From Mytilus edulis (lineage: Eukaryota), in the NCBI RefSeq assembly GCF_963676685.1, contig NC_092348.1, positions 83,142,001-83,206,000 on the forward strand: a stretch of 64,000 nt of DNA. The letters are read 5' to 3'. The position numbers and the translations under genes were made by a program. The notes below the pieces were generated by a model, which had not been told where the DNA came from, did not search any database, and worked only from the letters and a program-made list of their open reading frames with translations. Positions 22,301 through 55,045 of the stretch are shown here, in pieces (positions within the stretch are counted from its first letter, which is position 1; each line of letters begins with the position of its first letter).

Positions 22301-25300
22301 CTCTTGGACTTGGACTTAGACATCGATAGACATTAGTATTCACTTCATTTGGATTGACACTTTAATTCTACAAACAACATCATACTGGATTGTGACCGTA
22401 GTAGTGAACGTAATATTCAGATTGGATTCCGAAAGATATCCGGATACAGACAAAGATAAAAGATTGGACTCGTATTTTGACAGTTAAGTTGACAGTAATA
22501 TTTGTGTAATACTTCTTGTAAACTTTTGTATAATACATATTGTTAAATTTTACTATTGATTTGTGTCTTTTGTTGGCTACAATTTAAAGGCGATTTCTGG
22601 CCGTAACAATGTGACGTATGCCCTTAAGTAACCGTAAAAGAAAGGGAAAAAAAAAATGTTTGTATTTTCAGTTATCTGCGTCACAACTATGTCTACTTGA
22701 CATTTAATTGATTGATAATTATCAAAGGTACCAGGCTTATAATTTAATACGCCAGACGCGCGTTTTGACTACACAAGACTCATCGATGACGCCCAGATCA
22801 AAATGGTTAGAAAGTCAAACAAGTATAAAGTTGAAGAGCATTGGGGACCCAAAATTCCAAAAAGTTACGCCAAATACGGCTGTAGTAATCTATGCCTGAG
22901 ATAAAAAAAAATACATAGTATTTCGAATAGTTGATACTTTTGCTAACAGTAAATTTAAAAATTGAAAAACGGCTCAGATTTATAACACCATTGTCACGTA
23001 AGTTATAATGTCAGGTTAAGATCGTGTTTTTTCTTCCGTGAATCGGTCCAGTTGTTTCGAGTGTAGCAAGGTTCTTTTTCAATGAAATTGCTTGCGATCA
23101 AATTAATATACTGCAATTGCATAGTATAATAAATAAATTTAGTGTTTTTACTGCCTTCTGATTGGTTAAAATTATTAGTTTTATTTTCAATGTTGTCAAT
23201 TTTGATGGCGACACGCCCACTCTGACGTTTAGTATTCATACGCCAACATGTGTGTACGTTGTTATTGTTAATATAAATAATATAAAAAGTTCTTTGAGCC
23301 TTATTTTTTGATAGAAATTTATTTATAATGAATGGCAATAATTTATTTTGATTTTATTGAACCATAAAAGTAATTTTTGACTCTTCACATTTTACATAAT
23401 CTGCTTCGCGGATTATTCAATGTGAAGAGTCAAAAATTAGTTTTATGGTTCAATAAAATCAAAATAAATAATAGCCATTCATTAAATAGTGTCATCCACG
23501 AACAGTGATCAACAGTAACACTATGATTTTTTAGATTGTGTGGAGCATTTACTATGGATGTCATATCTAGTACAGCTTTTGGTATTGAGGTTAATTCCCA
23601 GAAAGAGCCAAATAATAGATTTGTTTTCTATGGAAAGAAAGCAGCCATTGGACAACTTGCCTCATCATTTGCTGTTTTTATCAGTAATTTATTTTATTAA
23701 CGACTGTATAAATCATTTGTTGTTGTCGTAATTATGTGAACCATATATAAATTAAGAACACAGATTATTGTTTGACATTCAGATCAACAGTATACAACAC
23801 TATAAGAATAAAGAGACGTGGAAAGTTTACGAATGAGACAACTGTCCAATAAAATTCAAATGAAGTGTATATATGTGAGTAATTATAGGCAACCATGCGG
23901 CCTTCAACAACGAGAAAAAAACATACTGTAAAGGCTAACGATTTTTTTTCAATTTAAGAATCGTTATAACCAATCAAAAACACATTGAGTATTCATATGC
24001 GAATTAATTTATTAATTCTATTTTTCAGTAATAAATTCATTGCAATCTTTTTATCGATCTGCTTATCAATCAATAACACTTCTGTTTTAAAAGTAAGGTG
24101 AAGATTCTATGTTAAACTTATTGCCATCTCGGAGTACATTAGATAACCCCGAAGTTTGGTGGTGTTGGTGTTGATCAGTATTTTGTTTGTAGCCTGTGTG
24201 CTGTTGCTTGTATTTTCGTATTGGCAATGATATTTTTTTTATCTTTATTTATTTTACTTAATGTGGTTGACTGTCCATTTGAATCTACTGCATGTTGGTG
24301 ATGATTTGTATACTAGTAAAGCATCCTACTAAACTGACTATAAAATTTGGAATATGTACTATTAGTTCAGTTGAACCCCAAATAATTGGAAATTTGCTAA
24401 AATTACATATTCAATCATATTTATTTTACCAATTAAAGCTTACTAACGTAATTATGTTGCAGTTTTACGGATGATTATTCTAAATTCCACATAAAAATTT
24501 CCACAGTGATGCACTCAGTATTCAGCCCTTAATTTATCATTTCACACTATCAAAGCTGTACCAGTACAGTGACACAAGAGATTTATAAACCGTATGGACG
24601 AATATATATTGAAAATGTTTCTATTTCAGTGATGTTTCCATTTCTGAAAAATATAGTTGGTACCATCCTGCTCCATGGAAATAGAGTTGGCAAAGATGTG
24701 ATTGAATTCTTCGACACTGCGCTACGGTCTGCTATTGATCTTCGAAAAGAAGGAAAGAATGAGGTATTGGAATTCAATGTGAATACAATAGATCAGAAAA
24801 TATATCGTTCATTTAAACATACGTGTAATATGTTTGATTCAGTTCCTCAATCCTATTTTTTTTTTAAATATACAATGTATATTAATGGTTTTTACGCTAA
24901 GTCTTTATTTTGGTTTTTGGATTTCAAACTGATTATATATTAATCCCCAATTGATCTTCCTCTAAGTTCAGTATTTTTGTGATTTTACTTTAAACTTTCC
25001 CAGCTATAAATTTTACCATGAGCAGCAGTCTGAATTTATTCAAGCTAAACGTGTTGTGCACACGAAAAGGATTTGGAGATTGATAAGGTAAAGAGGTCTT
25101 TAAAATGTGATTTTCGTGTGCACAACACCTTTTCACATGTTTAATTGAAGAAATTCAGACTGCTTCTAACTGTCAAGTTTACATTTGTGAAAGTTAATCA
25201 TAAATTCAGTGTTAAATCCCACAACCAAAAATAAAGCTTAAGCTGATCAACCATTATTATTGCTTCCTAAACGATTTCAGATTTGAATATAGGAAAAAAA

Positions 25301-41715: not shown

Positions 41716-44700
41716 GTATGTGATTAATATAATGTTATAATGGTTGATTTTAAATGGGTTACCATTTTTTTTTAAAGCATGCACACATTCCTGTCCTAAA
41801 CACATTTAGATGTAAAGAATGTACAGCACATTTTTTGTTTGTTCTCAGGATAACAAATATTCACATAATTCCGTTCTTTATCATGTTTATGTTGTTAAAT
41901 TTTTCAATGAAACAGATAATAGTCTTGAAGATTTATTTTTCAGGAATCAGGTGCTTCGTATTTTACCAAAGAGTTCGGATGAAATTCTGAAAATCGTAGA
42001 CATGGGTAAAAAGTACAATGTTAGTACATATAGTTTGTTATTTTAATATAATTTAACAGTGAAAATATGTAAAGTAACCGATACCGTTATCCTAGAGCAA
42101 ACATATGGAAGTTTTTAACGACCTTTACTGGCTATACAACCCTTGGACTGTCGGTAAATATCCTAGAGCAACAAAAGAAGACACTGATAGAAATAACCAT
42201 CTAATATGTTCTTCCCTATTTTCCAATGGTATTATACAGAAAAATATTAAAATATTTAACGAATAGAAGAGAAAAAAAAATCCAAACGACAACAAATACT
42301 GAATATTGAACTAAGCTGAGGATCATTATGTTCTACCTTAATAAATGTTCTGCGTTCAGAATATTGGGTCAGTCGAAATCGTCCGTCGATGAAAAAGTAG
42401 TAACACCATATCTAAGTGAAAACGCAACGCAGAGGCAATCAGCAACCATAATTTGAACGTCATTTGAACTCAAGTGGATATATGTCTCATTTTATTAAAA
42501 CAAGATTAAGATGAAACAACACAAATCTCAATAAATGCAGGGTGTAAATTCATATGCTCCTTAAAAGTCAGTAGAAAAATGACATTCGCTTTAGATAACA
42601 ATAAGGGTTAATAATACATTGTTTTTGTTGGAATAAATAAAATGTATAGAAAGAGACACGTACTTATATATTAAATTCTTGTAGGTTGATATTTGGAACA
42701 TACCAAAGTCCCTCAACAGTACACTGGATATTCATGTTGACGCACATAATCTCAAGGGATTTGTGGCAGAACTGAAATCACTTGGAACCAATTACATGAC
42801 ATGGATTGAAGACCTACAAAAGTAAGAAAGTAAATTATATTCAATATGTCGTTATAGAACTACAAATTGCAGTCAATATAAACTAAATTTGATCAAGGAA
42901 AGCGTCAACGGACATCTACTAAATGACCCGAGTAACACAGCAAGGGTTAGTTATACTGTCTTCAACAATAGAACTGATGTACACGATATTTATGTCAAGA
43001 ATTAAATCGTTCCCATCAACAGGTTTCAAGGATTTCGATATATCTTTGGTAACCATGGGCCAGTCACATCATATGTGATGCACACGGATTACATTCTACA
43101 TGGTGAATGAATGTTTCAGCGACTACCAAAGATCCGTCTCCAACAACTACATATAACTATGCACAGTTGAATGATTTAAAACTGTTTACAATAATCTAGA
43201 AATTATACAAGCATCTGGGTGGGATATGAATAAAATGAGATATAGGACCGGGACAACTGCATTCCTTTTAATTTAGGGAAGGTAGATTACATATCGTGTA
43301 CGTATTATAACCCTATGATTTATCAACGCCAGAGGTATGGCATTCGCTCTCGGCCTTTTGCCTCGGTGAAAATCATATCTTTGGGTTGATAAATCATAAT
43401 ATGTGTCTTACATCGTAAATACAATCCCCTTCCACTTTATGAATGTGACCTACCGAATTAGACTTTTTACCGGATTTGTTATCTCATAATCACCACGACG
43501 GGTGCCACATGTGGAGCAGAAATCTGCTTACCCTTCCGCAGCACCCGAGATCACCCCTAGTTTTCGGTCGGGTTCGTGTGGTTTATTCTTAAGTTTTTCT
43601 ATGTTGTGTCATGTGTAGTATTGTTTGTCTGTTTGTCCTTTTCATTTTTAGCCATGGCGTTGTCAGTTTATTTTCGATTTATGAGTTTGACTGTCCCTCT
43701 GGTATCTTTCGTCCCTCTTTAGTATCAAACTCATTAAAAGTCAATAATTGTATAATGTCAATGTGACAACTCTCACCAAATACCAAATGACTTAGATGTC
43801 AGCAACTATTGATTATCAATAAAGGCAACAGTAGTATACCGCTGTTCAAAACTCATAATCCATGGACAAATAACAAAATCGGGGTAACAAACTAAAACCG
43901 AGGGAAAAGCATTAAATATAAGAGGAGAACAACGACATAACACTAAAATGTAACACACATAGACAAAATTCCACGAGAATAACAAATATAACATATATAT
44001 ATATATAACATCAAAACCAAATACATGAATTTGGGATAGACAAGTACCGTGACACGTCTTATTGCAATGTGAATTTACACTCAAAAATAAGAGAAAACAA
44101 ACGACACAACGTTATAATGTAATACACACAGAAACGAACTATAATATAACAATGGCCATATTCCTGACTTGGTACAGGGCATTTTTAAAGGAAAAAATGG
44201 TGGGTTGAACCTGGTTTTGTGTCATGCCAAACCTCGCACTTTTATGGCCATGTGAAATATAACATCAAAATGACAACACAGAACTACAATATAAATAAAT
44301 TGGAGAACACAATTGACAAAGAATCACACGAACAACAGCCAACAAAAGGCAACAAGTTCAGAAGTGTATTTTGTCCACACAAGACCTACGTGTGACGCCC
44401 AGATATCAAGCCATCATACATGACAAATAGTAATCAATTCAGACGAAAAACCATTTGCCACATCGGTTTCCTATGCCTTAAAGCATACAGTTTTGGAAAT
44501 AATTGAGAAGAAAACTCTGACATTACATCAAATTTCCATAAAGTGACATCAGTATCAATATGTGCAGAAAAATAAAGGTGCAACAAAAAGCCCTAGACGC
44601 CGAATAATTGACAAAATCAGTAAAATCAAACAGAGTTACAAACAAATAACAATTCACTAAACATTAAGAAATACAAACCCCAAAACTACCGGGGTACTTA

Positions 44701-47700
44701 TGCCATACATTTCAATCACAAACAAAAAACATTTTATTTCCACATCACATAAAAGCAAAAGATTTATTCATTTACCATATACTATGGATTCATTACAATT
44801 CAATGGATACCAATTTTTCGAGGGTTTCAAGGGGAAAGATGAACCCCGAATTCAAACGCTCAACGAATAACACATTTCAAATAGGCTTTGTATACAGAGA
44901 TTGACAAAACCACGAAATAAAATATCCACGAATAGGCAAGTTTTCAGCAATCCACAAAAGTTGATACTCACGTAAATAAATGAATCCACAGTAACTTATG
45001 AAAAGATTTACTCACTCTTACATGTAATACCACATTTGTCGTATTAGAATCAAAATAAACAATTGTTACTGTCATTCCAAAAAATGAACGTTTTAACTCT
45101 TTCAGACTAATAGAAAATGAAAATGTCCATTCTTCACACGTGAAATCCAGAGCAGCGGCTAGCTTTAGTTTGTCACATTATCATTCAAGCTTTCAGGTAA
45201 TTATGTCATATTGTCATTCCAGTTATCATTTAACTATGTCCTAATATCATTCCAGCTATCAGGTAATTATATCTCATTGTCATTCCAGCGTTCAGGTAAT
45301 TATGTCGTATGATCAATCCAGCTTTTTAGTAATTATTATCATTCCAGCTATCAGGGTTCTATGTAATATTATCATTCCAGTTGTCAGTTAATTATAATTC
45401 ATGATCATTCCAGTTTTCAGGTAATTATGTTCCATTATCATTCTAGCTGTAGGTAATAATATTACATTTTCATTCAAGCTATCAGGTAATTAGGTCTTGT
45501 CATCATTCTATCTATCACGTGATTATGTCAAATTATAATTCCAAATATAAGGTAAATATGTCATTTTATCAGTCTAGCTATCAGGTAATTATGTTGTATC
45601 ACATGTATAGTTGTAGCAACCAGGTAATTATGTCATATAACAAGGAGACAGTAATATACCGCTGATTGAAAGTCATAACTCAATTGAGAGAAAACAAAGC
45701 CGGGTCGATATCATCATTCTAGTTATTAATTAATTATGTCAAATTATCGTTACAGCTATAAGGTAAGTCTGTCACATTGTCAGTCTACCAACCAGGTAAC
45801 TATGTCACATTATCATTCTAGCAACCAGGTAACTATGTCACATTATCATTCTAGATATCAGGTTATTATGTCACATTATCATTCTAGCTATCATGTTATT
45901 ATGTCACATAAGCATTCTACGATAAGATATCTCAATTTAAACATTTCCTTTATCGTGTGTCCATTTGGTGCCAATTTCAGGACATTGTGGCGCAGGTTTA
46001 AACGAAATGCGCATCTGGCGTATCAATTTTTAGAACTTAATCTATCATGGTAAAACATAGAACTGAGAATGGAATATATGAGTCCATTTATAGATGATTA
46101 GGTTTCCTGATCTTTATACAACAATATCACCTTTATTCAGGTAACATACAAACATAGTGACGAATAGAGGAACTATATCACGTAAATTACCAAAGTTTTA
46201 AGGATACTGAATATGACATACAGTCAAACACTTTGGTCCTGAATTAGAGATGGTATTTTTAGAAATAAAACTTATATTATTTACTTATTCATTTAAGTAT
46301 AATAGTATAATAGTAAATCTTGTCATTCATTTTTCACCACAGATCTCCAATCATTTAGATGCCGTAGCATTATCATCCAGATACGCAACTGTACATACTG
46401 CTGGTCATAGTGTACAAGGAAGGGCGATCAAATATTTGAAGGCAAGTAAAACGAATAGGTTGTGAAAAAGACCAATGTGAATTAGATGTGTTGTGTCTGT
46501 TGATTTTTTCTAGAGTCATAAATAGTCTATACTTTTATACGTCTTAATGATAATTCCTCGAATATTGTAGTTGTATTGACATCATTTACAAACTTAAAAC
46601 TTAGTGTATATAATCTATTCATTGTGTCTGTCTGATATGGGTAAACTATATGAATCATCAAGAGTAGCAATTATAAATTTGTATATTAAAACATAACAAA
46701 TACGCTGGCTGATAATATTTTGAATTTGTTTAATAGATGCAATGAAAAATTTACAATACAACAGTTTAAATAGTAATTAAAAATGTATGAAAACATAACT
46801 TTAATTAATGATCATTATATCATGTTCGTTTGTATAGGTCAGTTCAGGGGGATCAAAGAAAGCTATAATAATCGACGGAGGTATTCATGCTAGAGAATGG
46901 ATTTCTACTGCTGTTGTAATGTACCTCATTGATCAGGTTTGTTCTCATAACTAATAATGGGTAAATTAAAGAAATTCATAAATACAAATAATCTATACAT
47001 AGTGGTACTACTTGATATTTGGTAACAACTTCTTTTTTTTTTTTTATCTTTGAAAGGAATTTTTAGTCAATAATATAACTGCAAAATATCATAGCGTATT
47101 TAATAGATCCACAGATTATAATAGATTCATAGTTTAAAAAAAAAAAAAAAAAAATCCAACAACAACAAAAAACTCTTTAACGCTTAAAACGTTTTAAACG
47201 CTGGTGATACATCAGAAAATGCCTGTACCAAGTCAAGAATATGACAGTTGTTATGCATTCATTTGATGTGTTTTAGATTTTGCTATTTGATGAGGGATTT
47301 TCTGTTTTGAATTTTCCTCTGAGTTTACGGTAGTATTTTTTGTGATTTTACTTTTCAATGTATGGGGTTTGTACTGACTGTTTTATGATATGAGTCATGA
47401 GTGACGTAATTTAACAATAAATATCAATCTTCTTAACATTTAGCTCGCCATGAATCCTGATAACAACCCCGAGATAACTTCAATGTTACAGAAATTTGAC
47501 TGGTACCTTTTACCAGTGATGAATCCAGATGGATACGAGTACTCGAGAACGAATGTAAGTAAACTTATAAAACGATAAAATATAAAAAGGCAATTCAAGT
47601 ATTTTAATCTGCTCGAACAAAATTTAAATCAATATATATAAATATATATATATATAACATCTTCAGAAAGGTAACTGAACGTATTAAAACAACAGGAACT

Positions 47701-50700
47701 CAATAGAACTAAGGCGGTTCAAGTATCTAAAACTGCTCGAATAAAATGTAAATTAATAAATACTGACTCCAAGTATAAATGTAAGTAAATTTATAAAACG
47801 ACGAGAACTTGTTCATGTTGTTACAACCTATAAGAATTCATGCAATTCAAATAATGAAAAGTGCTCGAACACAATGTGAATAAATAGATAATAGCTTCTA
47901 GACCAAATGTTAGTCAACTATAAAACAACACAAATATTTATGTAGTTTGGCAGAAAGTACATGAACTTCTAAGGCAGGTCAAGTAGTAAAATCAACAGGA
48001 ACAGATGTAAGTCATTTATGCAATCGTGTGCAATCGCGGCTAAATCTATAATTTTGCATACCTTGTAAGAAGTTCAAAAAGGAACAAGCATGTGCTCTCA
48101 TTTTCAATTGATAGTGTGGCGGCTTAGTACCGAAATTTGACAAAATCATGCAAATGGTGATACAAGCAAGGGATTTGACATAGATGTTCATTAGGAAGTA
48201 CTTTATCGTATACGAGGAGTAGCCAACATGTTTTTGATTTTTTTTTCACGGCGGCCATCTTGAAGTTAAAATTGACATCATTTTGCTCAATCGTGGAGAT
48301 TGAAAAACTGTTCTTACCATTTTCAACGCTATATATGTCATGACAACTATTTGAATACAATAAAATGATATGAAAATATGTCAAACAGACAACAATTGTA
48401 AAAAAAAATCACCACTTCCGGTTTGGGTCGAAAAAGTTCGTACACTCGAGTGAAATAATAGTGGTATAGATATACGATCAAAATATCCGTTTGATATATC
48501 GGTAATAATATTAGACATGCTGGAGGAATGATTAGTGTAATAATGTACAATATTTTCCGATGTATTCCGTTTTAACAGATACATGAACATAATTTTGTAC
48601 AGGTCAAGCCAGCTTTGTAACACTTACAATTACCAAAACATGTTTTCTTGCAACCACATTTATGTAACTCCTGGCAAGATGCAGCAATTGCTGCTAATTT
48701 TGTCAAATGAGGAATCCACATTCCATCTGCGTTCTAGATCTCCTAAACCCATCCCCAATCACCAGGACTAGGTAGATGTTGATCATGCGTGACTGCCTGT
48801 CCCCATACATGGCCACCTCGGTATGTAGCTAGTTTGGTACAGCTCTAGTTGGTCGAATGGTGTCATACTGTCTTTGTTTGCGTGCAAATAGTTCAAGTCT
48901 GGATTCGTTGATGTCAAATGTTGTTGTAGTTCTGTCGTACATAACCACAACAAATGCCTCTATCAACTCCATATCAGCCTCACTGACCAATACAGTTTTC
49001 TCACTTTATCGTTCAAAAACCTCGGTTATATCATTAAATATTTCCCACGTCATGCCATCTCAATATGTAATCCACCGAACGTAACAACGAATTCATTTGG
49101 CCATTCCCATTGAATTTGATCTGCCAAAACAAATAGCGGTTGGTCTGCTGTAATCAATGGAGTTTGACCAGCATTAACAAACAACACAACATCCCTGAGC
49201 TTATCCATCGAATGTTTTATGGTAGCAACTGAGTGAGCTTGTTCTTAAAATAATGGCATTAAGCAGCTAAGACTTATTTCAACAGTTGATCCACGTCTCT
49301 CTAAAGAATGAAATGATGACCATGAAATATTTTCGGACGTAATATCTTCACTTGTTAACCTCACCGTATTTAACCACTCAAGCTCATGAATAGATAATTG
49401 TGGTTAAGTATATTAGTAATATCGTCAGGCAGAATGAGAAGTTTTGGTTTTGTTTTAAGATAGGCATGTTCTTACAAAGTTTCATGCTTGTATCACCATT
49501 TGCATGATTTGTGTGGTAAGCTGCTTAACTATGACATCAACACAACTATATCTAAAGCTACAGATACGTTAAAAAAAATAAATGAAAATGAACTTGTTTG
49601 ACACTATCATATTTAAATGTTCACTAAACCATGACAGTATTATCATCTACATAATTTGTTCAAAAACCTCATCAATATCAAGGACAATAAACTCATAATT
49701 GTGAGCAACAGTCGCGGGTCCCGTCTACAGAACACTCACCTGTGACAATCGAATTTAACAAGTCAAACGACCAAATATATAAATACTTGGAAAGTTCACA
49801 TCATAATTTACACATATACCAAGTCTCAAATTGATTAGACTATAAGTTCATAATAACCAGCTTCGTTGGTCAATAAACTTCAACCTGATACGGGATGGAA
49901 GAACAGTTGGTCGATCAAAACAAAATCTCCCTTTACTTTATGTGTATTTCTCTAATGGTTGAAATTGCAAGTTCTTTGTGATAGAAATTATCTTCATTCT
50001 AATGTTTTTTTTATTAATTTCGTCATAAGATACGTGTACAAAATTGTATTTCAGAATAGAATGTGGAGAAAGAATCGAGCAACATCTCATAGTATAACAG
50101 GAACATGTACTGGTGTTGATCTCAATAGAAATTTTGGATTTCACTGGAATCCAGGTATTATAAAAAAAATCTTTATACAAGTTAAATGATGTGATACATT
50201 CGAAGTTTTCAATTTAACAGGCCATCGATGATTTTTTGCATTATTAGGATTCTAGTAAAACTATTTCTATAAAATTATTTGGCACAACTTTTCGGAATTT
50301 TGTATCCTCAATGCTCTTCAACTTTGTGCTTGTTTGGCTTTATAAATATTTTGATATGAGCGTCACTGATGAGTCTTATGTAGACAAAACGCGCGTCTGG
50401 CGTACTAAATTATAATCCTGGTACCTTTGATAACTATTTACACCACTGGGTCGATACCACTGCTGGTGGACGTTTCGTCCCTGAGGTTATCAACAGCCCA
50501 GTAGTGAACACTTCGGTGTTGACATGAATATCATTTATGTGGTCATTTTTTTTTTTTATAAATTTCCTGTGTACAAAACTTTGAATTTTTCGAAAAACTA
50601 AGGATTTTATTATCCCAGGCATAGAATACCTTAGCCGTATTTGGCACAACTTTTCGGAATTTTGGATCCTCAATGCTCCTCAACTTTGTACTTGTTTGGC

Positions 50701-53415
50701 TTTATAAATATTTTGATATGAGCGTCACTGATGAGTCCTATGTAGACGAAACGCGCATCTGGCGTACTAAATTATAATCCTGGTAACTATTAATTTGGCG
50801 GAACTCATGTTTTTATGATTTTTTGTGTTGATGCGAATTATTTATAGGGACTCCCCTCCGCCAATCACATTTCAGCCTACCCTCACGCCATCGACATTAA
50901 CACATGGTTTAGAATGTTGATTTTTATATCATACACAAATGTGTACTATGCCTATTGTTGGCTGTTATTTTTACACTATTGCGTTTCCAATTGTGTACAT
51001 GTATGCAAGACAGCTTTTTGGTACCCCTCATGGTCATCATTTTAGATTACATTGGTAAATAAGATTTCGTGTTTAAATTTATTAAGCGTGGATTACATCA
51101 TGGTCATTATTTTAAATGACATCGGATAAGAAAAGATTCCATACTAAAATTGATGAAATATATCATAATTACGCATAGGAGAACAATATACTGTAAAATA
51201 TTACAACTCTAAATTTCAGCGATCGGCGGAAGTAGAGATGAATGTGAGGAGACATTTGCTGGAACTAAAGCTTTCTCAGAACCAGAGTCCCGAGCAGTCG
51301 GTCATTTGATGCAAAGTCTTAGAGGTCAGGCAATAGCATACCTTAATTTACACTCTTATGGACAGCTGTGGCTTTGGCCATGGGGATATACTACTAGTCT
51401 TCCTTCTGATTTGGCAGATCTGGTAAGATGTAAGATTGGTGTTGCTTTTAAATATCTTGGACATTTACTTCTAAATTGATTTGGAATATAGCTTTTGCAG
51501 TCTTTACATTTTACTATGTTGCGTATAACTTCCTGTTGACACGTTATTTATCGAAATGAAGTCAGCACTTTTTATCTCACCTAGGGCGGAGGACCAAATG
51601 AGGTTTCGCATTACTTGGAGTCCGTAGTCCGTCTTCGTCGTCGTCGTTGTTAACTTTTTGCATTTTGGACTTCTTCTAGAGAACCACTGAATAGAATGAA
51701 ACAAAACATGGCATGAGTGTTCCTTATTAAGTTCTGACCAAGTGTTGTAATTTTGTATACGATCCATCATTCAAGATGGCGGCCAGCGGGGGATAATCCA
51801 TAAAAATGTCTTTTCTTAGAGAACCACTGTACATGTATATTAAATATTAAACCAAATTTGACCTCAATCGTTATTAGGGTATCTGTTATGATTTTTATCT
51901 GTTTTACATTATTTCCAAAACCAAAGTAGAATCAGGTGAGCGACACAATCTCTTTGGAGCCTCTTGTTTAACTTAGAACGATAAATAGACTATATCTATA
52001 TAGATAAGCAACCCTTTATTGATAAAAGTTTACAGTTATATACTCTTTATATAAGTACATATTATATTTCAAACAAAGCGCAACATTTCCCTATAAAAAT
52101 CAATATTTCATAAAGTTTTACATTTGAACGATTGTTGATTGCTGAACGTACAGCGGTACATTGTTTATGATTATTCAGATTGAAAACAAATCATAATAAA
52201 TCAAATAGGTAGATCGGAATACTAGTTTTGACTGCTCCAGGAAAATGATTGAAAGGATAAAACATGTTGCCTTCCAATGAGGCACCTCAAAACAAAAGGT
52301 CAACTGTAACGGGACATATCTTTTATTCCCAGGTCAATTTTAATGAAATGTTTCCTCTACTGTTCGTGAATATACTGCTTACATGTGTGTGTATTGTTTG
52401 TCAGGAAGCGCCAGCTCGGCACATCAAATGTGTTATTTTCCAACCAAATTTATGATTCATATGCGGTATATATATAAAGAAACGTACATTATTTGTTTAT
52501 CCTTTGAGATCGATAAGAGTTATGTTAAGCATTACTTAAAACGTTTATGTTCTCTTTTTTTTCTACAGAAACATATGGCTGGAAGAGGAGCTGCTGCTAT
52601 CTACCCTTCCAATCATGCCCATTACACCACCGGTGGTGATGCGACAGATTTATGTAAGTGTTGTTTTTTTTATGTGCATTCTGTTGGAGAATCAATAGTA
52701 TATTTATGTTTTTTTTATGTTTGTGCATATTTGTCTAGGTAGGAATTGTAAAACGAAAATGTTAACTTTTGATCAATAATTGTTCTGATTGATTGTTGAC
52801 ATGTTTTTATCAATATATAAGAAGTACAAATAACAAAATAACTGAACTCTGAATAACATTTAAACCGGAAATTTCCGAATGAAATCGCAAAATTAAAAGC
52901 TCAAGACATCAACCGAATGGATAATAACTAATTTATTCCTGACTTGGAACAGACATTTTCCTAATGGAATAAACCTGGGTTTATTGATAGCTACACCTTT
53001 CACTTGTATGACGATTGCATAAAAATTCCATTGTGTTGAAAAACCCAGACATAATTGGTTTCATCTAGGTGTCTATGTATACACGATTATAAATCGCTGG
53101 AGATGTACTAAACACATTAATAATTATATTATCTTAATGTTGTTTTGTGTTAATTTTGCAATGTTATAAACAAATAACAAGATTTGTCACCACTTGATGT
53201 ACATACGTTCTTTATCAACAGACCCAGCTGCTGGAGGAGCTGACGATTTCGCTAAAGGTGGCGCTGGTATAAAATATTCATACACCGTAGAATTACGGGA
53301 TACTGGACGACATGGCTTTGTTCTACCAGCTAGCACTATTATCCCATCCGGGGAAGAAACATTGAAGGGAATAATAGCATTTGCCAGCGAACTATATGCA
53401 TATGAGAGACTGTAG
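41636..53415 (+). CDS. CPB-like: Preprocarboxypeptidase, M14A family, carboxypeptidase B-like; 11 coding exons, 1275 nt, 424 aa
   Basis: Exons 41636-41715, 41944-42019, 42685-42821, 45106-45196, 46343-46441, 46838-46936, 47444-47554, 50055-50154, 51220-51422, 52569-52653, 53222-53415. Signal peptide, pro-domain, GIHAREW (His69/Glu72), NPDGY, WRKNR, DLNRNF, LHSY (His196), YPAAGGADD (Tyr248, Asp255), TVELR (Glu270). Confidence 0.95.
41944..42019 (+). CDS. CPB-like exon, pro-domain ([10 protein letters not shown]...)
   Basis: cag|G...AAT|gttagt. Confidence 0.88.
42685..42821 (+). CDS. CPB-like exon, pro-domain (VDIW...DIHV...IEDLQ)
   Basis: gtag|GTT...AA|gtaaga. Confidence 0.9.
43810..44370 (+). 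repeat. Dispersed repeat family D (fragments at 34900-35045 minus, 45641-45710, 55205-55460)
   Basis: caacagtagtataccgctgttcaaaactcata...aaaatcggggtaacaaactaaaaccgag shared among copies. Confidence 0.7.
44780..44993. mobile_element. Tc1/mariner-type MITE (TA-flanked)
   Basis: TA-ctatggattcatt ... aatgaatccacag-TA. Confidence 0.75.
45106..45196 (+). CDS. CPB-like exon, activation junction (LIENE...[18 protein letters not shown])
   Basis: tcag|A...CAG|gtaatt. Confidence 0.9.
45171..45920 (+). repeat. 33-bp minisatellite (about 20 units) derived from the exon 3' end plus splice donor
   Basis: Consensus tgtcacattatcattccagctatCAG|GTaatta; unit 1 overlaps exon 45106-45196; interrupted at about 45641-45710 by a family-D fragment. 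Confidence 0.9.
46343..46441 (+). CDS. CPB-like exon ending at a GC donor (...[13 protein letters not shown])
   Basis: acag|ATC...AAG|gcaagt. Confidence 0.88.
46838..46936 (+). CDS. CPB-like exon ([12 protein letters not shown])
   Basis: atag|GTC...CAG|gtttgt; Zn ligands. Confidence 0.95.
47444..47554 (+). CDS. CPB-like exon ([12 protein letters not shown])
   Basis: ttag|CTC...AAT|gtaagt. Confidence 0.95.
48112..49531 (-). mobile_element. Academ DNA transposon, internally deleted relic, in CPB-like intron 7
   Basis: TAG...CTA termini, TGA TSD (48109-48111 and 49532-49534), perfect inverted block aaatcatgcaaatggtgatacaagca. Minus-strand fragments: [58 protein letters not shown], and Cys-rich [26 protein letters not shown]. 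Confidence 0.85.
50055..50154 (+). CDS. CPB-like exon (RMWRKNR...GVDLNRNF)
   Basis: tcag|AAT...G|gtatta. Confidence 0.95.
50360..50403 (+). ncRNA. Type I hammerhead ribozyme, core mutated (GAAA to AAAA)
   Basis: gcgtca-CTGATGA-gtct tatgt agac-AAAA-cgcgcGTC-tggcgt. Confidence 0.8.
50722..50765 (+). ncRNA. Type I hammerhead ribozyme, intact core boxes, stem III mismatch (AUC site)
   Basis: gcgtca-CTGATGA-gtc ctatgta gac-GAAA-cgcgcATC-tggcgt. Confidence 0.85.
51220..51422 (+). CDS. CPB-like exon (FSEPE...[14 protein letters not shown])
   Basis: tcag|CG...CTG|gtaaga. Confidence 0.95.
51569..51970 (+). mobile_element. Helentron-associated non-autonomous element (HINE/pearl-like)
   Basis: T-run plus ctcacct subterminal repeat, (gtc)n microsatellite, core, caggtgagc inverted repeat, 3' ctct-ttg-gagc hairpin then ttgttt. 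Confidence 0.7.
52569..52653 (+). CDS. CPB-like exon (...[11 protein letters not shown])
   Basis: acag|AAA...T|gtaagt. Confidence 0.9.
53222..53415 (+). CDS. CPB-like last exon (PAAGGADDF...[16 protein letters not shown]...*)
   Basis: acag|AC...TAG; ORF 53194-53415. Confidence 0.95.
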
Positions 53416-54437
53416 AATAGTGTCTTTGTTATGAATTGTGTCAAACTCAATGATATATTAGATTTTAACGCCTATTTTCTGTTCCTTCGAATTCCAGTAA
53501 AACAGTTTGAAATATATTTGATTTAGTTAATTATAAAAGATCAAAGTTTTATTATTTGTGGTGATTTATTTGCGCGATATTCTATTTCTAGCGAATGTCG
53601 CAAATAATAAAGTGCTCGCGATTTAGTTGATTTACAGTATATTGTAACTCAAATTTAGCATGTAAATATCGAACATAGATAACTTTTTTAAACTCCTCTC
53701 AAAAAATATATAATATTAGTAATAAAAACTTATACAGTATCGATGACGTGCTCTGAACTACCCTGACAAGGTACGCCCATATCCCGAATTAAAAATATAT
53801 GTACCAAATGTTTTTTTAAAGATACCACGGGGTGTCCATAGCGATACTTCTATTTTGTTACCCTAAATCATACATTGACGACGAACAACTCTTCTACAAT
53901 AGCTATGTTAATGATTATGCTTATAAACAAAGCATAATAGTTTTGTGTACACAAAACATGATTGTTTCTTCAAAGAGTCTTAGTTTTAAGGAACAAGGGG
54001 TTATTAGGTTTGTTTTGGACACAACCCAAATGTCACGTAACTTGTTATGGTGCCACTCTATACCATAGACTTTCTGAAAAGGGTATAACTCGTATATTCT
54101 GTTGCCAATATACTAGTGGCGATAAACAATATGCTAAATATACAGCAGGAAAAAACAATACACATTGCAACATGAAAAACTATTACTACATGTACTACAC
54201 GCGTAAAGCATTAATCTATATTACATATTTAAGAAAGCTTAAAAAAATTTGGAAAAGTATTTTTCGAATTCAAAGAAAAACATCTATAAAATCAAATCGA
54301 TTTATTCTGAACTGATTGATATTTTTGTCCTTGAGATTGACTTCTTTATCTTATCGGCTGATAATCAAATACAGACAACATTAGTATACTGTATTTCAAT
54401 AGTTAAAGTTAGCAATTCACAGTTCGGAGTGTGGTTT

Positions 54438-55045
54438 TAACAGCCCAGTAATCAACACTTCGGTGTTGACATGAAAATCAATAATGTGCTCATTTTAATA
54501 CATTTCCTGTTACAAAACTTTGAATTTTTCGAAAACTAAGGATTTTTTTTATCCCAGGCATAGATTACCTTAGCCGTATTTGGCACAACTTTTTGGAATT
54601 TTGGATCCTCAATGCTCTTCAACTTTGTACTTGTTTGGCTTTATAAATATTTTGATATGAGAGTCACTGATGAGTCTTATGAAGACGAAACGCGCGTCTG
54701 GCGTACTAAATTATAATCCTGGTACCTTTGATAACTATTTGCATTCATTTTGCCTCCGTGAATTTGTTGACTATGAAAATTAATTTGAAATAAAATTAAT
54801 GTGAAATAAAATTCATTTAAACATAAAATTCAGTTAGACAGCTGATGACTAATTCAGCTTTCAGATTGGGTTCACCTGAGCTGTTTTTGGCATTTTTGTT
54901 CTCAATGCTTTTCAACTTTGTACTTTATTTGGCCTTTGTAATTTGTTTTGGATTCGAGCGTCACTAATAAATCTTTTGTAGACGAAGCACGCTTCTGGCG
55001 TAAAAACAAAATTTAATCCTGGTATCTATGATGAGCTTATTTATA
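54438..55045 (+). mobile_element. Retrozyme-family repeat: one well-preserved unit (54438-54740) plus a degenerate partial unit (54885-55045)
   Basis: Near-identical to 50492-50791; second hammerhead degenerate (CTAATAA...GAAG at 54964). Confidence 0.85.
54661..54704 (+). ncRNA. Type I hammerhead ribozyme with canonical core
   Basis: gtca-CTGATGA-gtctt atg aagac-GAAA-cgcgcGTC^tggc; predicted cleavage after 54698. Confidence 0.88.

What the first reader, a model, noticed from the sequence alone, without database searches (positions are those of the whole stretch)
50360..50765. Two individually defective intronic hammerheads that complement into one canonical dimeric ribozyme
Seen: two type I hammerheads 362 nt apart, sense within intron 8 of the CPB-like pre-mRNA. 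Copy 1 has a dead core (GAAA to AAAA, 50386) but a good GUC site. Copy 2 has intact CUGAUGA/GAAA but a stem III mismatch (AUC). Established: minimal hammerheads with a palindromic stem III (ACGCGCGU) act as dimers that swap cleavage strands, and such tandem retrozymes yield circular RNAs in mussels. Inference: pairing 50389-50396 with 50751-50758 (6 contiguous bp) and 50722-50727 with 50398-50403 builds a canonical site from the copy 2 core and the copy 1 GUC. Both lesions then fall in the other site. Prediction: a single cut after 50397 in the host intron and no monomer/circRNA release, so a retrozyme reduced to a one-shot pre-mRNA cleaver.
Basis: partly seen in the sequence, partly recalled or inferred. 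Interest (0 to 1): 0.8.

Follow-up and report, generated by a model that had tools for sequence, protein, structure and literature searches.

The report
Decaying mussel hammerhead retrozyme in intron
The two hammerhead ribozyme motifs are real, but they belong to an ordinary, mutation-worn 1.4-unit copy of a known and very abundant mussel "retrozyme" repeat inside a carboxypeptidase intron, and the way their defects complement each other occurs about as often as chance predicts.

Summary
Two type I hammerhead motifs lie at 50360-50403 and 50722-50765 on the + strand, 362 nt apart. They run in the sense direction in an intron of an M14 procarboxypeptidase gene. Copy 1 has GAAA changed to AAAA (50386). 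Copy 2 has a C·A mismatch in helix III (50757).

The element (50276-50796) is a 5'-truncated, 1.44-unit copy of the published Mytilus retrozyme family. This genome holds more than 17,600 hammerheads with the consensus 3' half. Both lesions are CpG-to-CpA transitions away from that consensus, and 861 other copies carry the same AAAA.

50738 T>C shortens helix II of copy 2, and it falls inside the supposedly good site.

Substitutions are no rarer in the hammerheads than in the rest of the element. The same upstream-dead-core plus downstream-mismatch arrangement occurs at 3 of 107 eligible tandem pairs, against 1.25 expected (P=0.13).

In an RNA run that expresses the gene, the intron is spliced out normally. 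The runs gave no locus-specific evidence on read ends at 50397/50398.

A single cut is structurally possible but untested, and nothing suggests selection for it. The scan has already noted this retrozyme family many times elsewhere in this genome.

The parts
50276..50796 (+). Retrozyme insertion: 521 nt, 1.44 units of the 362-nt repeat, 5'-truncated, with the family's usual 3' end (…AACTATT), GC 0.37. An 8-nt deletion lies near the 3' end (GGTA/ACTATT here versus GGTACCTTTGATAACTATT internally).
   Evidence: Direct repeat. 93-94% identity to many genomic units. Flanks 50155-50275 and 50797-50950 score no better than shuffles against the unit. GC and length. The common 3' end shows as loose read ends at 50437-50440 and in the sibling copies.
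50360..50403 (+). Hammerhead copy 1. The core is dead by G12>A at 50386 (GAAA to AAAA). The GUC cleavage triplet is intact, with C17 at 50397.
   Evidence: The commonest natural 44-mer has G at this position (57 of 106 copies). RNA reads from other copies show G in about 92%.
50722..50765 (+). Hammerhead copy 2. CUGAUGA and GAAA are intact. 50757 G>A gives a C15.2/A16.2 mismatch in helix III (AUC triplet). 50738 T>C shortens helix II from 4 to 3 bp.
50398..50759 (+). One full 362-nt repeat unit between the two nominal cleavage sites. It has 15 substitutions against the majority of 55 natural units, plus extra T's in a run whose length varies among the natural units. Median identity to natural units is 93.9%.
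50389..50396 (+). Palindromic helix III strand of copy 1 (ACGCGCGU). It can pair with 50751-50758 of copy 2, giving 6 contiguous bp, then one C·A mismatch, then a terminal A-U.
   Evidence: Pairs enumerated. Predicted pair probability is about 3%.
50152..51216 (+). Host intron of the M14 procarboxypeptidase gene that contains the element. The cut point is ambiguous by +3.
   Evidence: Spliced junction 50151>51217 with GT..AG ends, in an RNA contig at depth about 1,600. Flanking Peptidase_M14 exons. Propeptide exon at 42685-42822. Stop codon at 53413-53415.
54430..54745 (+). Sibling solo copy of the same family, 5'-truncated. Its hammerhead at 54661-54704 has an intact core but a C>A change (54662) in the helix I 5' strand relative to the commonest 44-mer. 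It lies about 1.25 kb downstream of the gene's stop codon.
22720..22960 (-). Another degenerate sibling copy. Its hammerhead also carries AAAA, plus changes in the CUGAUGA box.

Best explanation
This is an ordinary, old insertion of the Mytilus type I hammerhead retrozyme, a non-autonomous, non-LTR retroelement family. It lies in the sense direction in an intron of a digestive-type M14 procarboxypeptidase gene.

The copy arrived as a 5'-truncated 1.44-mer carrying two hammerheads from one template. The two repeats share a derived C at 50293/50655, which supports a single template. Since then the copy has decayed neutrally. The two repeats have picked up 6 substitutions between them. Three of these lie in the hammerheads, and the two headline lesions are CpG-to-CpA transitions.

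The intron, with the element inside it, is transcribed as part of the pre-mRNA and removed by normal splicing. That the AAAA and the helix III mismatch both fall in the same half of a potential double hammerhead is a coincidence. The remaining hybrid site (copy 2 core plus copy 1 GUC) is itself weakened by a helix II mismatch. It might cut a minor fraction of intron RNA, but there is no sign that this happens or matters.

Basis of each step:
- Shown: family membership, the lesions and their direction of change, the chance-level frequency of the arrangement, and normal splicing.
- Inferred: neutrality, and no functional cleavage.
For: Family:
- 4,660 first-look candidates and 161 scored matches at 89-94% identity, many in tandem arrays of 354-365 nt.
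- The consensus 21-mer of the hammerhead 3' half occurs 17,612 times in the genome.
- The genome is 1.37 Gb and the hits fall on contigs C1-C14.
- PMC7229834 describes about 5,000 such type I hammerheads in 350-390 bp repeats in M. galloprovincialis, expressed as circRNAs.

Lesions are ordinary:
- The exact G12A 21-mer occurs 861 times.
- Both headline lesions sit at CpG sites of the consensus.

No constraint on the hammerheads:
- 2 substitutions in 44 hammerhead positions against 13 in 314 elsewhere in the unit.
- 3 of the 6 differences that arose after duplication are inside the hammerheads.

The arrangement is at chance level:
- A downstream G16.2A follows 43 of 3,692 pairs with a wild-type upstream copy (1.16%).
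- It follows 3 of 107 pairs with a G12A upstream copy.
- Expected 1.25; Poisson P=0.13; Fisher P=0.14.

Splicing and read ends:
- The exon-exon junction across this intron is present at depth about 1,600 in RNA run X15. Unique intron sequence is at depth 3.3.
- Two raw RNA runs show no pile-up of read ends at 50397/50398. Those reads come from other copies, so this is weak evidence.
Against: The hybrid site has every invariant core nucleotide, a GUC triplet, a 6-bp helix I and a 6-bp helix III. Its predicted energetic cost (+7.8 kcal/mol) is no higher than that of double hammerheads in intact dimers. Some cleavage after 50397 therefore cannot be excluded.

Three loci against 1.25 expected is a slight excess, though not a significant one.

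The DNA contigs of an independent individual (X4) break inside the repeat, so the two lesions were not independently confirmed as real bases on one haplotype.

No RNA run gave locus-specific reads over the element.
Confidence: 0.85

Rival explanations
1. The two copies in the intron RNA form a strand-swapped double hammerhead, and the single competent site (copy 2 core plus copy 1 GUC) cuts after 50397 in a detectable fraction of pre-mRNA or excised intron. This would be a by-product without selected function.
For: The pairing is correct and the core nucleotides of the hybrid site are intact. The double conformer costs +7.8 kcal/mol above the MFE here, against a median of +10.0 in intact natural dimers. 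It also costs less than folding both copies as monomer hammerheads, which is +20.4. Dimeric cleavage through an elongated helix III is documented for newt and viroid hammerheads (PMC6155905) and for axolotl retrozymes (PMC7229834).
Against: Helix II of the copy 2 core is cut to 3 bp by 50738 T>C. The predicted probability of the trans helix III is about 3%, and of the hybrid helix I about 0.2%. Even intact family members are slow, at about 0.1 per min in vitro, and lack most of the nucleotides conserved for the loop 1-loop 2 tertiary contacts (PMC7229834). Copy 1 is transcribed and can misfold 362 nt before copy 2 exists. No ends were seen at 50397/50398, although no locus-specific reads were available.
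Confidence: 0.12
2. The element has been retained or co-opted as a single-cut regulator of the carboxypeptidase pre-mRNA, in the manner of a domesticated intronic or discontinuous hammerhead.
For: The element is in the sense direction in an intron. Domesticated intronic hammerheads (amniote RECK, CTCL, DTNB) and the discontinuous Clec2 hammerhead exist as precedents (PMC6155905).
Against: Substitutions are not depleted in the hammerheads. The arrangement occurs at chance frequency. The mRNA is spliced normally and is abundant. One of thousands of dispersed copies is expected to land sense in an intron by chance. The scan has also noted another sense-intronic tandem copy of this family.
Confidence: 0.02
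3. One or both lesions are assembly errors or rare alleles, and the locus really carries two intact hammerheads that release a 362-nt monomer.
For: Short-read contigs from an independent individual break inside the repeat, so the bases were not independently confirmed. RNA reads over these positions mostly show the consensus bases.
Against: Those reads match only partly and come from other copies: 350 of 397 and 367 of 396 reads are only partly on the stretch. The lesions sit among about 15 other private substitutions in the same unit, as expected of a truly diverged copy. The same lesions are common genome-wide.
Confidence: 0.03

Closest known systems
Metazoan non-LTR retrozymes with type I hammerheads, Mytilus galloprovincialis family (Cervera & de la Peña 2020, PMC7229834)
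   Same: Unit length of 362 nt, within the published 350-390 bp. Low GC (0.37). A type I hammerhead with a 2-bp helix III capped by GCGC. Thousands of genomic copies, often tandem. The genome is mussel-like. The family is transcribed, as family reads in the RNA runs show.
   Different: This copy is a decayed 1.44-mer with three hammerhead lesions. It cannot release a monomer by two cuts, so it is very unlikely to be a source of circRNA.
Double (dimeric) hammerhead self-cleavage of newt satellite 2, ASBVd and axolotl retrozymes (reviewed in PMC6155905; PMC7229834)
   Same: Two tandem motifs in one RNA, a weak helix III with a palindromic sequence that can form an elongated intermolecular-type helix III, and swapped cleavage strands.
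   Different: In those systems both sites are competent and both are cut. Here only one hybrid site keeps its core, and that site is weakened in helix II. A dimer requirement has been shown for amphibian motifs, not for the mussel family.
Discontinuous hammerhead in Clec2 3' UTRs, and conserved intronic hammerheads of amniotes (RECK, CTCL, DTNB) (PMC6155905)
   Same: A hammerhead built from segments hundreds of nt apart within a host pre-mRNA or mRNA, or a hammerhead lying sense in an intron, that could cut the host transcript once.
   Different: Those are conserved across species with intact cores. This locus shows neutral-looking decay, and no conservation or cleavage evidence.

Membership tests
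Hammerhead ribozyme type I (Rfam RF00163) | Conserved CUGAUGA box | tested here: met
   50366-50372 and 50728-50734.
Hammerhead ribozyme type I (Rfam RF00163) | Conserved GAAA box, with G12 as the general base | tested here: not met
   Copy 1 has AAAA (50386 A). Copy 2 has GAAA. So the feature is met in copy 2 only. The role of G12 as general base is from PMC6155905.
Hammerhead ribozyme type I (Rfam RF00163) | Three helices around the core, with helix I open, and an NUH cleavage triplet | tested here: met
   Helix I is 6 bp in both copies. Helix II is 4 bp in copy 1 and 3 bp in copy 2. Helix III is 2 bp in copy 1 and 1 bp in copy 2. The triplets are GUC and AUC.
Hammerhead ribozyme type I (Rfam RF00163) | Score at or above the Rfam gathering threshold (34 bits) | tested here: not met
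   26.5 and 24.3 bits, with no match at gathering level in the whole window. The intact sibling reaches 33.4 bits.
Mytilus non-LTR hammerhead retrozyme | Short repeat of about 350-390 bp carrying a type I hammerhead, found as dimers to multimers, with low GC | tested here: met
   362-nt spacing. Tandem arrays of 354-365 nt elsewhere in the genome. GC 0.37. Published description in PMC7229834.
Mytilus non-LTR hammerhead retrozyme | Thousands of related copies in the genome | tested here: met
   17,612 exact consensus 21-mers and 861 G12A variants. 4,660 first-look candidates for the whole unit.
Mytilus non-LTR hammerhead retrozyme | Expressed as monomeric linear and circular RNA | not testable with these tools
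   Family-level reads are present in the RNA runs and circRNAs are published (PMC7229834). Nothing is locus-specific, and this copy lacks two competent sites.
Double-hammerhead (dimeric) mechanism | Palindromic helix III sequence that allows an extended helix between two motifs on one RNA | tested here: met
   ACGCGCGU pairs with ACGCGCAU over 6 contiguous bp. Both motifs are in one intron on one strand.
Double-hammerhead (dimeric) mechanism | Cleavage that depends on, or is enhanced by, the second copy | not testable with these tools
   Needs in vitro transcription of constructs with one motif and with two.
Domesticated host-gene hammerhead (amniote intronic / Clec2 type) | Sequence constraint on the ribozyme beyond that of the surrounding DNA | tested here: not met
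   Substitution density is 2/44 in the hammerhead against 13/314 elsewhere. 3 of the 6 differences that arose after duplication lie in the hammerheads.
Domesticated host-gene hammerhead (amniote intronic / Clec2 type) | Cleavage of the host transcript in vivo | tested here: inconclusive
   No end pile-up at 50397/50398. However, the raw RNA runs lack exon reads of this gene, and the reads on the repeat come from other copies. The mRNA is spliced normally in X15.

The most novel reading that the evidence does not exclude
The decayed dimer still works as a natural 'complemented' double hammerhead. The intact core of copy 2 cuts the intact GUC of copy 1, 362 nt upstream, once, after 50397 in the carboxypeptidase intron. 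No monomer is released. This would be an accidental, retrozyme-derived analogue of the discontinuous Clec2 hammerhead. About 3 loci of this exact kind exist in the genome, and more could exist with other lesion pairs.
Probability: 0.1. Interest if true: 0.45.

Novelty: already known. Interest (0 to 1): 0.15.

Why it matters
As it stands, the locus is one more worn-out copy of a published mussel retrozyme family, so it adds little. In genomes with thousands of tandem hammerhead repeats, random decay will regularly produce dimers in which only one hybrid site survives. If such sites cut, retrozyme debris in introns and UTRs could act as sporadic single-cut elements on host transcripts. That would be a plausible first step towards the domesticated intronic hammerheads of amniotes. 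The counts obtained here (107 tandem pairs with a dead upstream core, 3 with the complementing partner) give a concrete list on which to test that idea. They show no sign that selection favours the arrangement.

Tried and rejected
1. The Rfam gathering-threshold scan of the whole window gave no hit. The motifs appear only in the permissive scan.

2. RNA-seq test of the predicted cut:
- The two raw-read RNA runs had zero reads on the gene's exons.
- Their reads on the element were mostly partial matches from other family copies, with G at 50386 in about 92%.
- Read ends at 50397/50398 therefore could not be assessed for this locus.
- The only read-laying run is now used.

3. Confirming the lesions in an independent DNA run (X4). 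The Logan contigs break at the repeat borders, near 50268 and 50764, so the result is inconclusive.

4. A possible third, older repeat remnant upstream (50200-50275), suggested by a forced MAFFT alignment. Rejected: blastn scores equal those of shuffled sequence.

I shortened the pattern to within the stated limit.

6. The idea that the hybrid site is energetically inaccessible. Rejected: it costs no more than the double hammerhead does in intact dimers.

7. The ordinal 'intron 8' and a full gene model were not pursued. Only the exon positions from the Pfam matches and one verified splice junction are reported.
Full report
**What is there**

Reading 50200-50900 shows two near-identical stretches 362 nt apart, and each contains a type I hammerhead.

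Copy 1:
- helix I 5' strand, GCGUCA: 50360-50365
- CUGAUGA: 50366-50372
- helix II, GUCU/AGAC with loop UAUGU: 50373-50385
- AAAA: 50386-50389
- C15.2, GCGC, G16.2, U16.1: 50390-50396
- C17: 50397
- helix I 3' strand, UGGCGU: 50398-50403

Copy 2 has the same layout at +362. Its CUGAUGA (50728-50734) and GAAA (50748-50751) are intact. It has A in place of G16.2 at 50757, and C in place of U at 50738.

Rfam's Hammerhead_1 model aligns end to end to exactly 50360-50403 (26.5 bits, E=5.7e-4) and 50722-50765 (24.3 bits, E=2.9e-3). Both are below the gathering score of 34, and nothing in the window reaches gathering level. The intact sibling copy at 54661-54704 reaches only 33.4 bits, so part of the shortfall belongs to the family. 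A motif pattern gives 4 hits in the window against none in 100 shuffles. The repeat 50276-50426 / 50638-50788 is 95% identical.

**Host context**

Peptidase_M14 matches on the + strand lie at window 46844-46948, 47459-47578, 50052-50156, 51225-51428 and 53221-53367. A propeptide exon lies at 42685-42822, and the stop codon is at 53413-53415. An RNA contig in run X15 joins 50151 to 51217 with GT..AG ends at depth about 1,600. The element therefore lies in the sense direction inside a verified 1,065-nt intron of a procarboxypeptidase gene. I did not verify that this is intron 8.

**What the element is**

One 362-nt unit finds 161 scored matches in the window's own genome, out of 4,660 first-look candidates. 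Identity is 89-94%, and many matches are head-to-tail arrays of 354-365 nt. The genome is 1.37 Gb and the hits fall on contigs C1-C14.

The 21-mer that covers the consensus 3' half of the hammerhead occurs 17,612 times. The commonest natural 44-mer hammerhead makes up 57 of 106 copies in 30 fetched loci. It has GAAA, GUC and a 4-bp helix II.

This matches the published retrozymes of Mytilus galloprovincialis: about 5,000 type I hammerheads in 350-390 bp repeats, low GC, expressed as abundant circRNAs, and a cloned repeat that cleaves at about 0.1 per min (PMC7229834).

The flanks 50155-50275 and 50797-50950 are unrelated to the unit. The insertion is therefore 50276-50796, which is 521 nt or 1.44 units, with GC 0.37. 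Its 3' end (…AACTATT) is the family's usual end:
- The sibling copies in the window at 54430-54745 and 22720-22960 stop at the same point.
- RNA reads from many other loci diverge into heterogeneous flanks at 50437-50440.

The 5' ends differ between copies, as expected for 5'-truncated retrotransposition.

**The lesions**

Relative to 55 natural units, the full unit 50398-50759 carries 15 substitutions (about 4%). It also has extra T's in a run whose length varies among the natural units.

The two repeats differ at 7 positions. Six are substitutions and one is at the deleted 3' end. By comparison with the family majority:
- Copy 1 changed at 50303, 50328 and 50386.
- Copy 2 changed at 50679, 50738 and 50757.

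Both repeats share a derived C at 50293/50655, so they came from one template and diverged after insertion.

50386 (GACG to GACA) and 50757 (GCGT to GCAT) are both CpG-to-CpA transitions. The same G12A 21-mer is present 861 times in the genome. The degenerate copy at 22758-22786 in this window has it too.

**Is there constraint?**

Substitution density is 2/44 in the hammerhead part of the unit and 13/314 elsewhere. Of the six substitutions that arose after duplication, three fall in the 44-nt hammerheads, against about 1.8 expected. There is no depletion, and so no sign of purifying selection on either motif.

**Is the complementing arrangement special?**

I counted tandem pairs genome-wide with exact 15-mers separated by 335-360 nt.

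| Upstream copy | Pairs with any downstream copy | Downstream copy with G16.2A |
|---|---|---|
| Wild type | 3,692 | 43 (1.16%) |
| G12A | 107 | 3, this locus included |

The expected number for the G12A row is 1.25, with Poisson P=0.13 and Fisher P=0.14. Older pairs carry more lesions in both halves, so a mild excess is expected anyway. The arrangement is what random decay of thousands of dimers produces.

Yes, as geometry. 50391-50396 pairs with 50756-50751, and 50398-50403 pairs with 50727-50722. This assembles a three-way junction from the copy 2 core and the copy 1 GUC. The AAAA and the C·A mismatch fall in the reciprocal site.

Constrained folding of 50276-50800 gave these costs above the MFE (-111.8 kcal/mol):
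- double hammerhead: +7.8 kcal/mol
- copy 1 as a monomer hammerhead: +9.0
- copy 2 as a monomer hammerhead: +14.0
- both copies as monomer hammerheads: +20.4

In 12 intact natural dimers the medians are +10.0 for the double form, +9.3 and +8.0 for the single monomers, and +16.8 for both monomers. The hybrid site is therefore no less accessible than in working dimers.

Several things count against efficient cutting:
- In every case these are minor conformers. The predicted probability of the trans helix III is about 3%, and of the hybrid helix I about 0.2%.
- The model ignores tertiary contacts.
- The family is slow even when intact, and lacks most of the nucleotides conserved for the loop 1-loop 2 contacts (PMC7229834).
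- Helix II of the required core is shortened.

Dimeric cleavage through an elongated helix III is documented for newt and viroid hammerheads (PMC6155905) and for axolotl retrozymes. The same paper groups mussel motifs with the invertebrate hammerheads that cleave as single motifs (PMC7229834).

**RNA evidence**

Run X15 expresses the gene. Exon depth is about 1,500, the correctly spliced junction is present, and unique intron sequence at 50841-51200 has depth 3.3. The element therefore does not prevent expression or splicing.

The two raw-read RNA runs have no reads on the exons. Their 397 and 396 reads on the element are mostly partial matches and carry the family's consensus bases: G at 50386 in about 92%, T at 50738 and G at 50757. 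They come from other copies. No accumulation of ends is seen at 50397/50398, but this says little about this locus.

DNA contigs of an independent individual stop at the repeat borders. They show that the 3' junction (50764 onward) exists there, but they do not confirm the lesions.

**Verdict**

The locus is a member of a known family in a known state: a neutrally decaying retrozyme copy in an intron. I put detectable cleavage at about 10% and a selected role at about 2%.

What argues against anything beyond coincidence:
- a third lesion in the 'good' site
- CpG-type decay
- no constraint on the hammerheads
- genome-wide frequency at chance level
- normal splicing

From my own knowledge, not tested here: ribozyme cuts inside introns are often tolerated by co-transcriptional splicing. 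Even a real cut would therefore not necessarily affect the mRNA.

Earlier notes of this scan describe the same retrozyme family at many other places in this genome, including its fixed 3' end and another sense-intronic tandem copy. They agree with what I found here.

Noticed in passing
window 54430-54745 (+), hammerhead at 54661-54704: A solo, 5'-truncated copy of the same retrozyme family. Its hammerhead has an intact core (33.4 bits) but a C>A change at 54662 in the helix I 5' strand. It is on the same strand as the carboxypeptidase gene, about 1.25 kb downstream of its stop codon (53413-53415). If the 3' UTR reaches that far, this nearly intact single motif would bear more on the mRNA than the decayed intronic pair does.
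   Followed up: partly
window 54880-55030 (+): A more diverged hammerhead-like repeat with a degraded core (CTAATAA in place of CTGATGA, GAAGCACGCTTC in place of GAAACGCGCGTC), apparently from a related retrozyme subfamily. It lies directly downstream of the solo copy.
   Followed up: no
window 22720-22960 (-): Another degenerate copy of the family. Its hammerhead carries the same GAAA-to-AAAA change plus changes in the CUGAUGA box. It illustrates how common this CpG lesion is.
   Followed up: partly
window 50437-50440, and the 3' ends of the copies at 54745 and 22720: Family copies share one fixed 3' end, about 40-43 nt downstream of the ribozyme cut site (…GATAACTATT), and have scattered 5' ends. 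RNA reads from many loci diverge into different flanks exactly here. This fits target-primed reverse transcription from a defined 3' end rather than random opening of a circle.
   Followed up: partly
window 50505-50522 (+): The retrozyme unit contains a short hairpin with a cUUCGg-type tetraloop (CACUUCGGUG). It is conserved in the sibling copy at 54456-54470. Earlier notes of the scan link this domain to Naiad-type Penelope-like elements.
   Followed up: no
G000:C8:62683290-62683667 (L032) and G000:C10:45241143-45241509 (L033): The only two other tandem pairs in the genome with the same combination: an upstream AAAA core and a downstream GCGCATC site. Their genomic context was not examined.
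   Followed up: no
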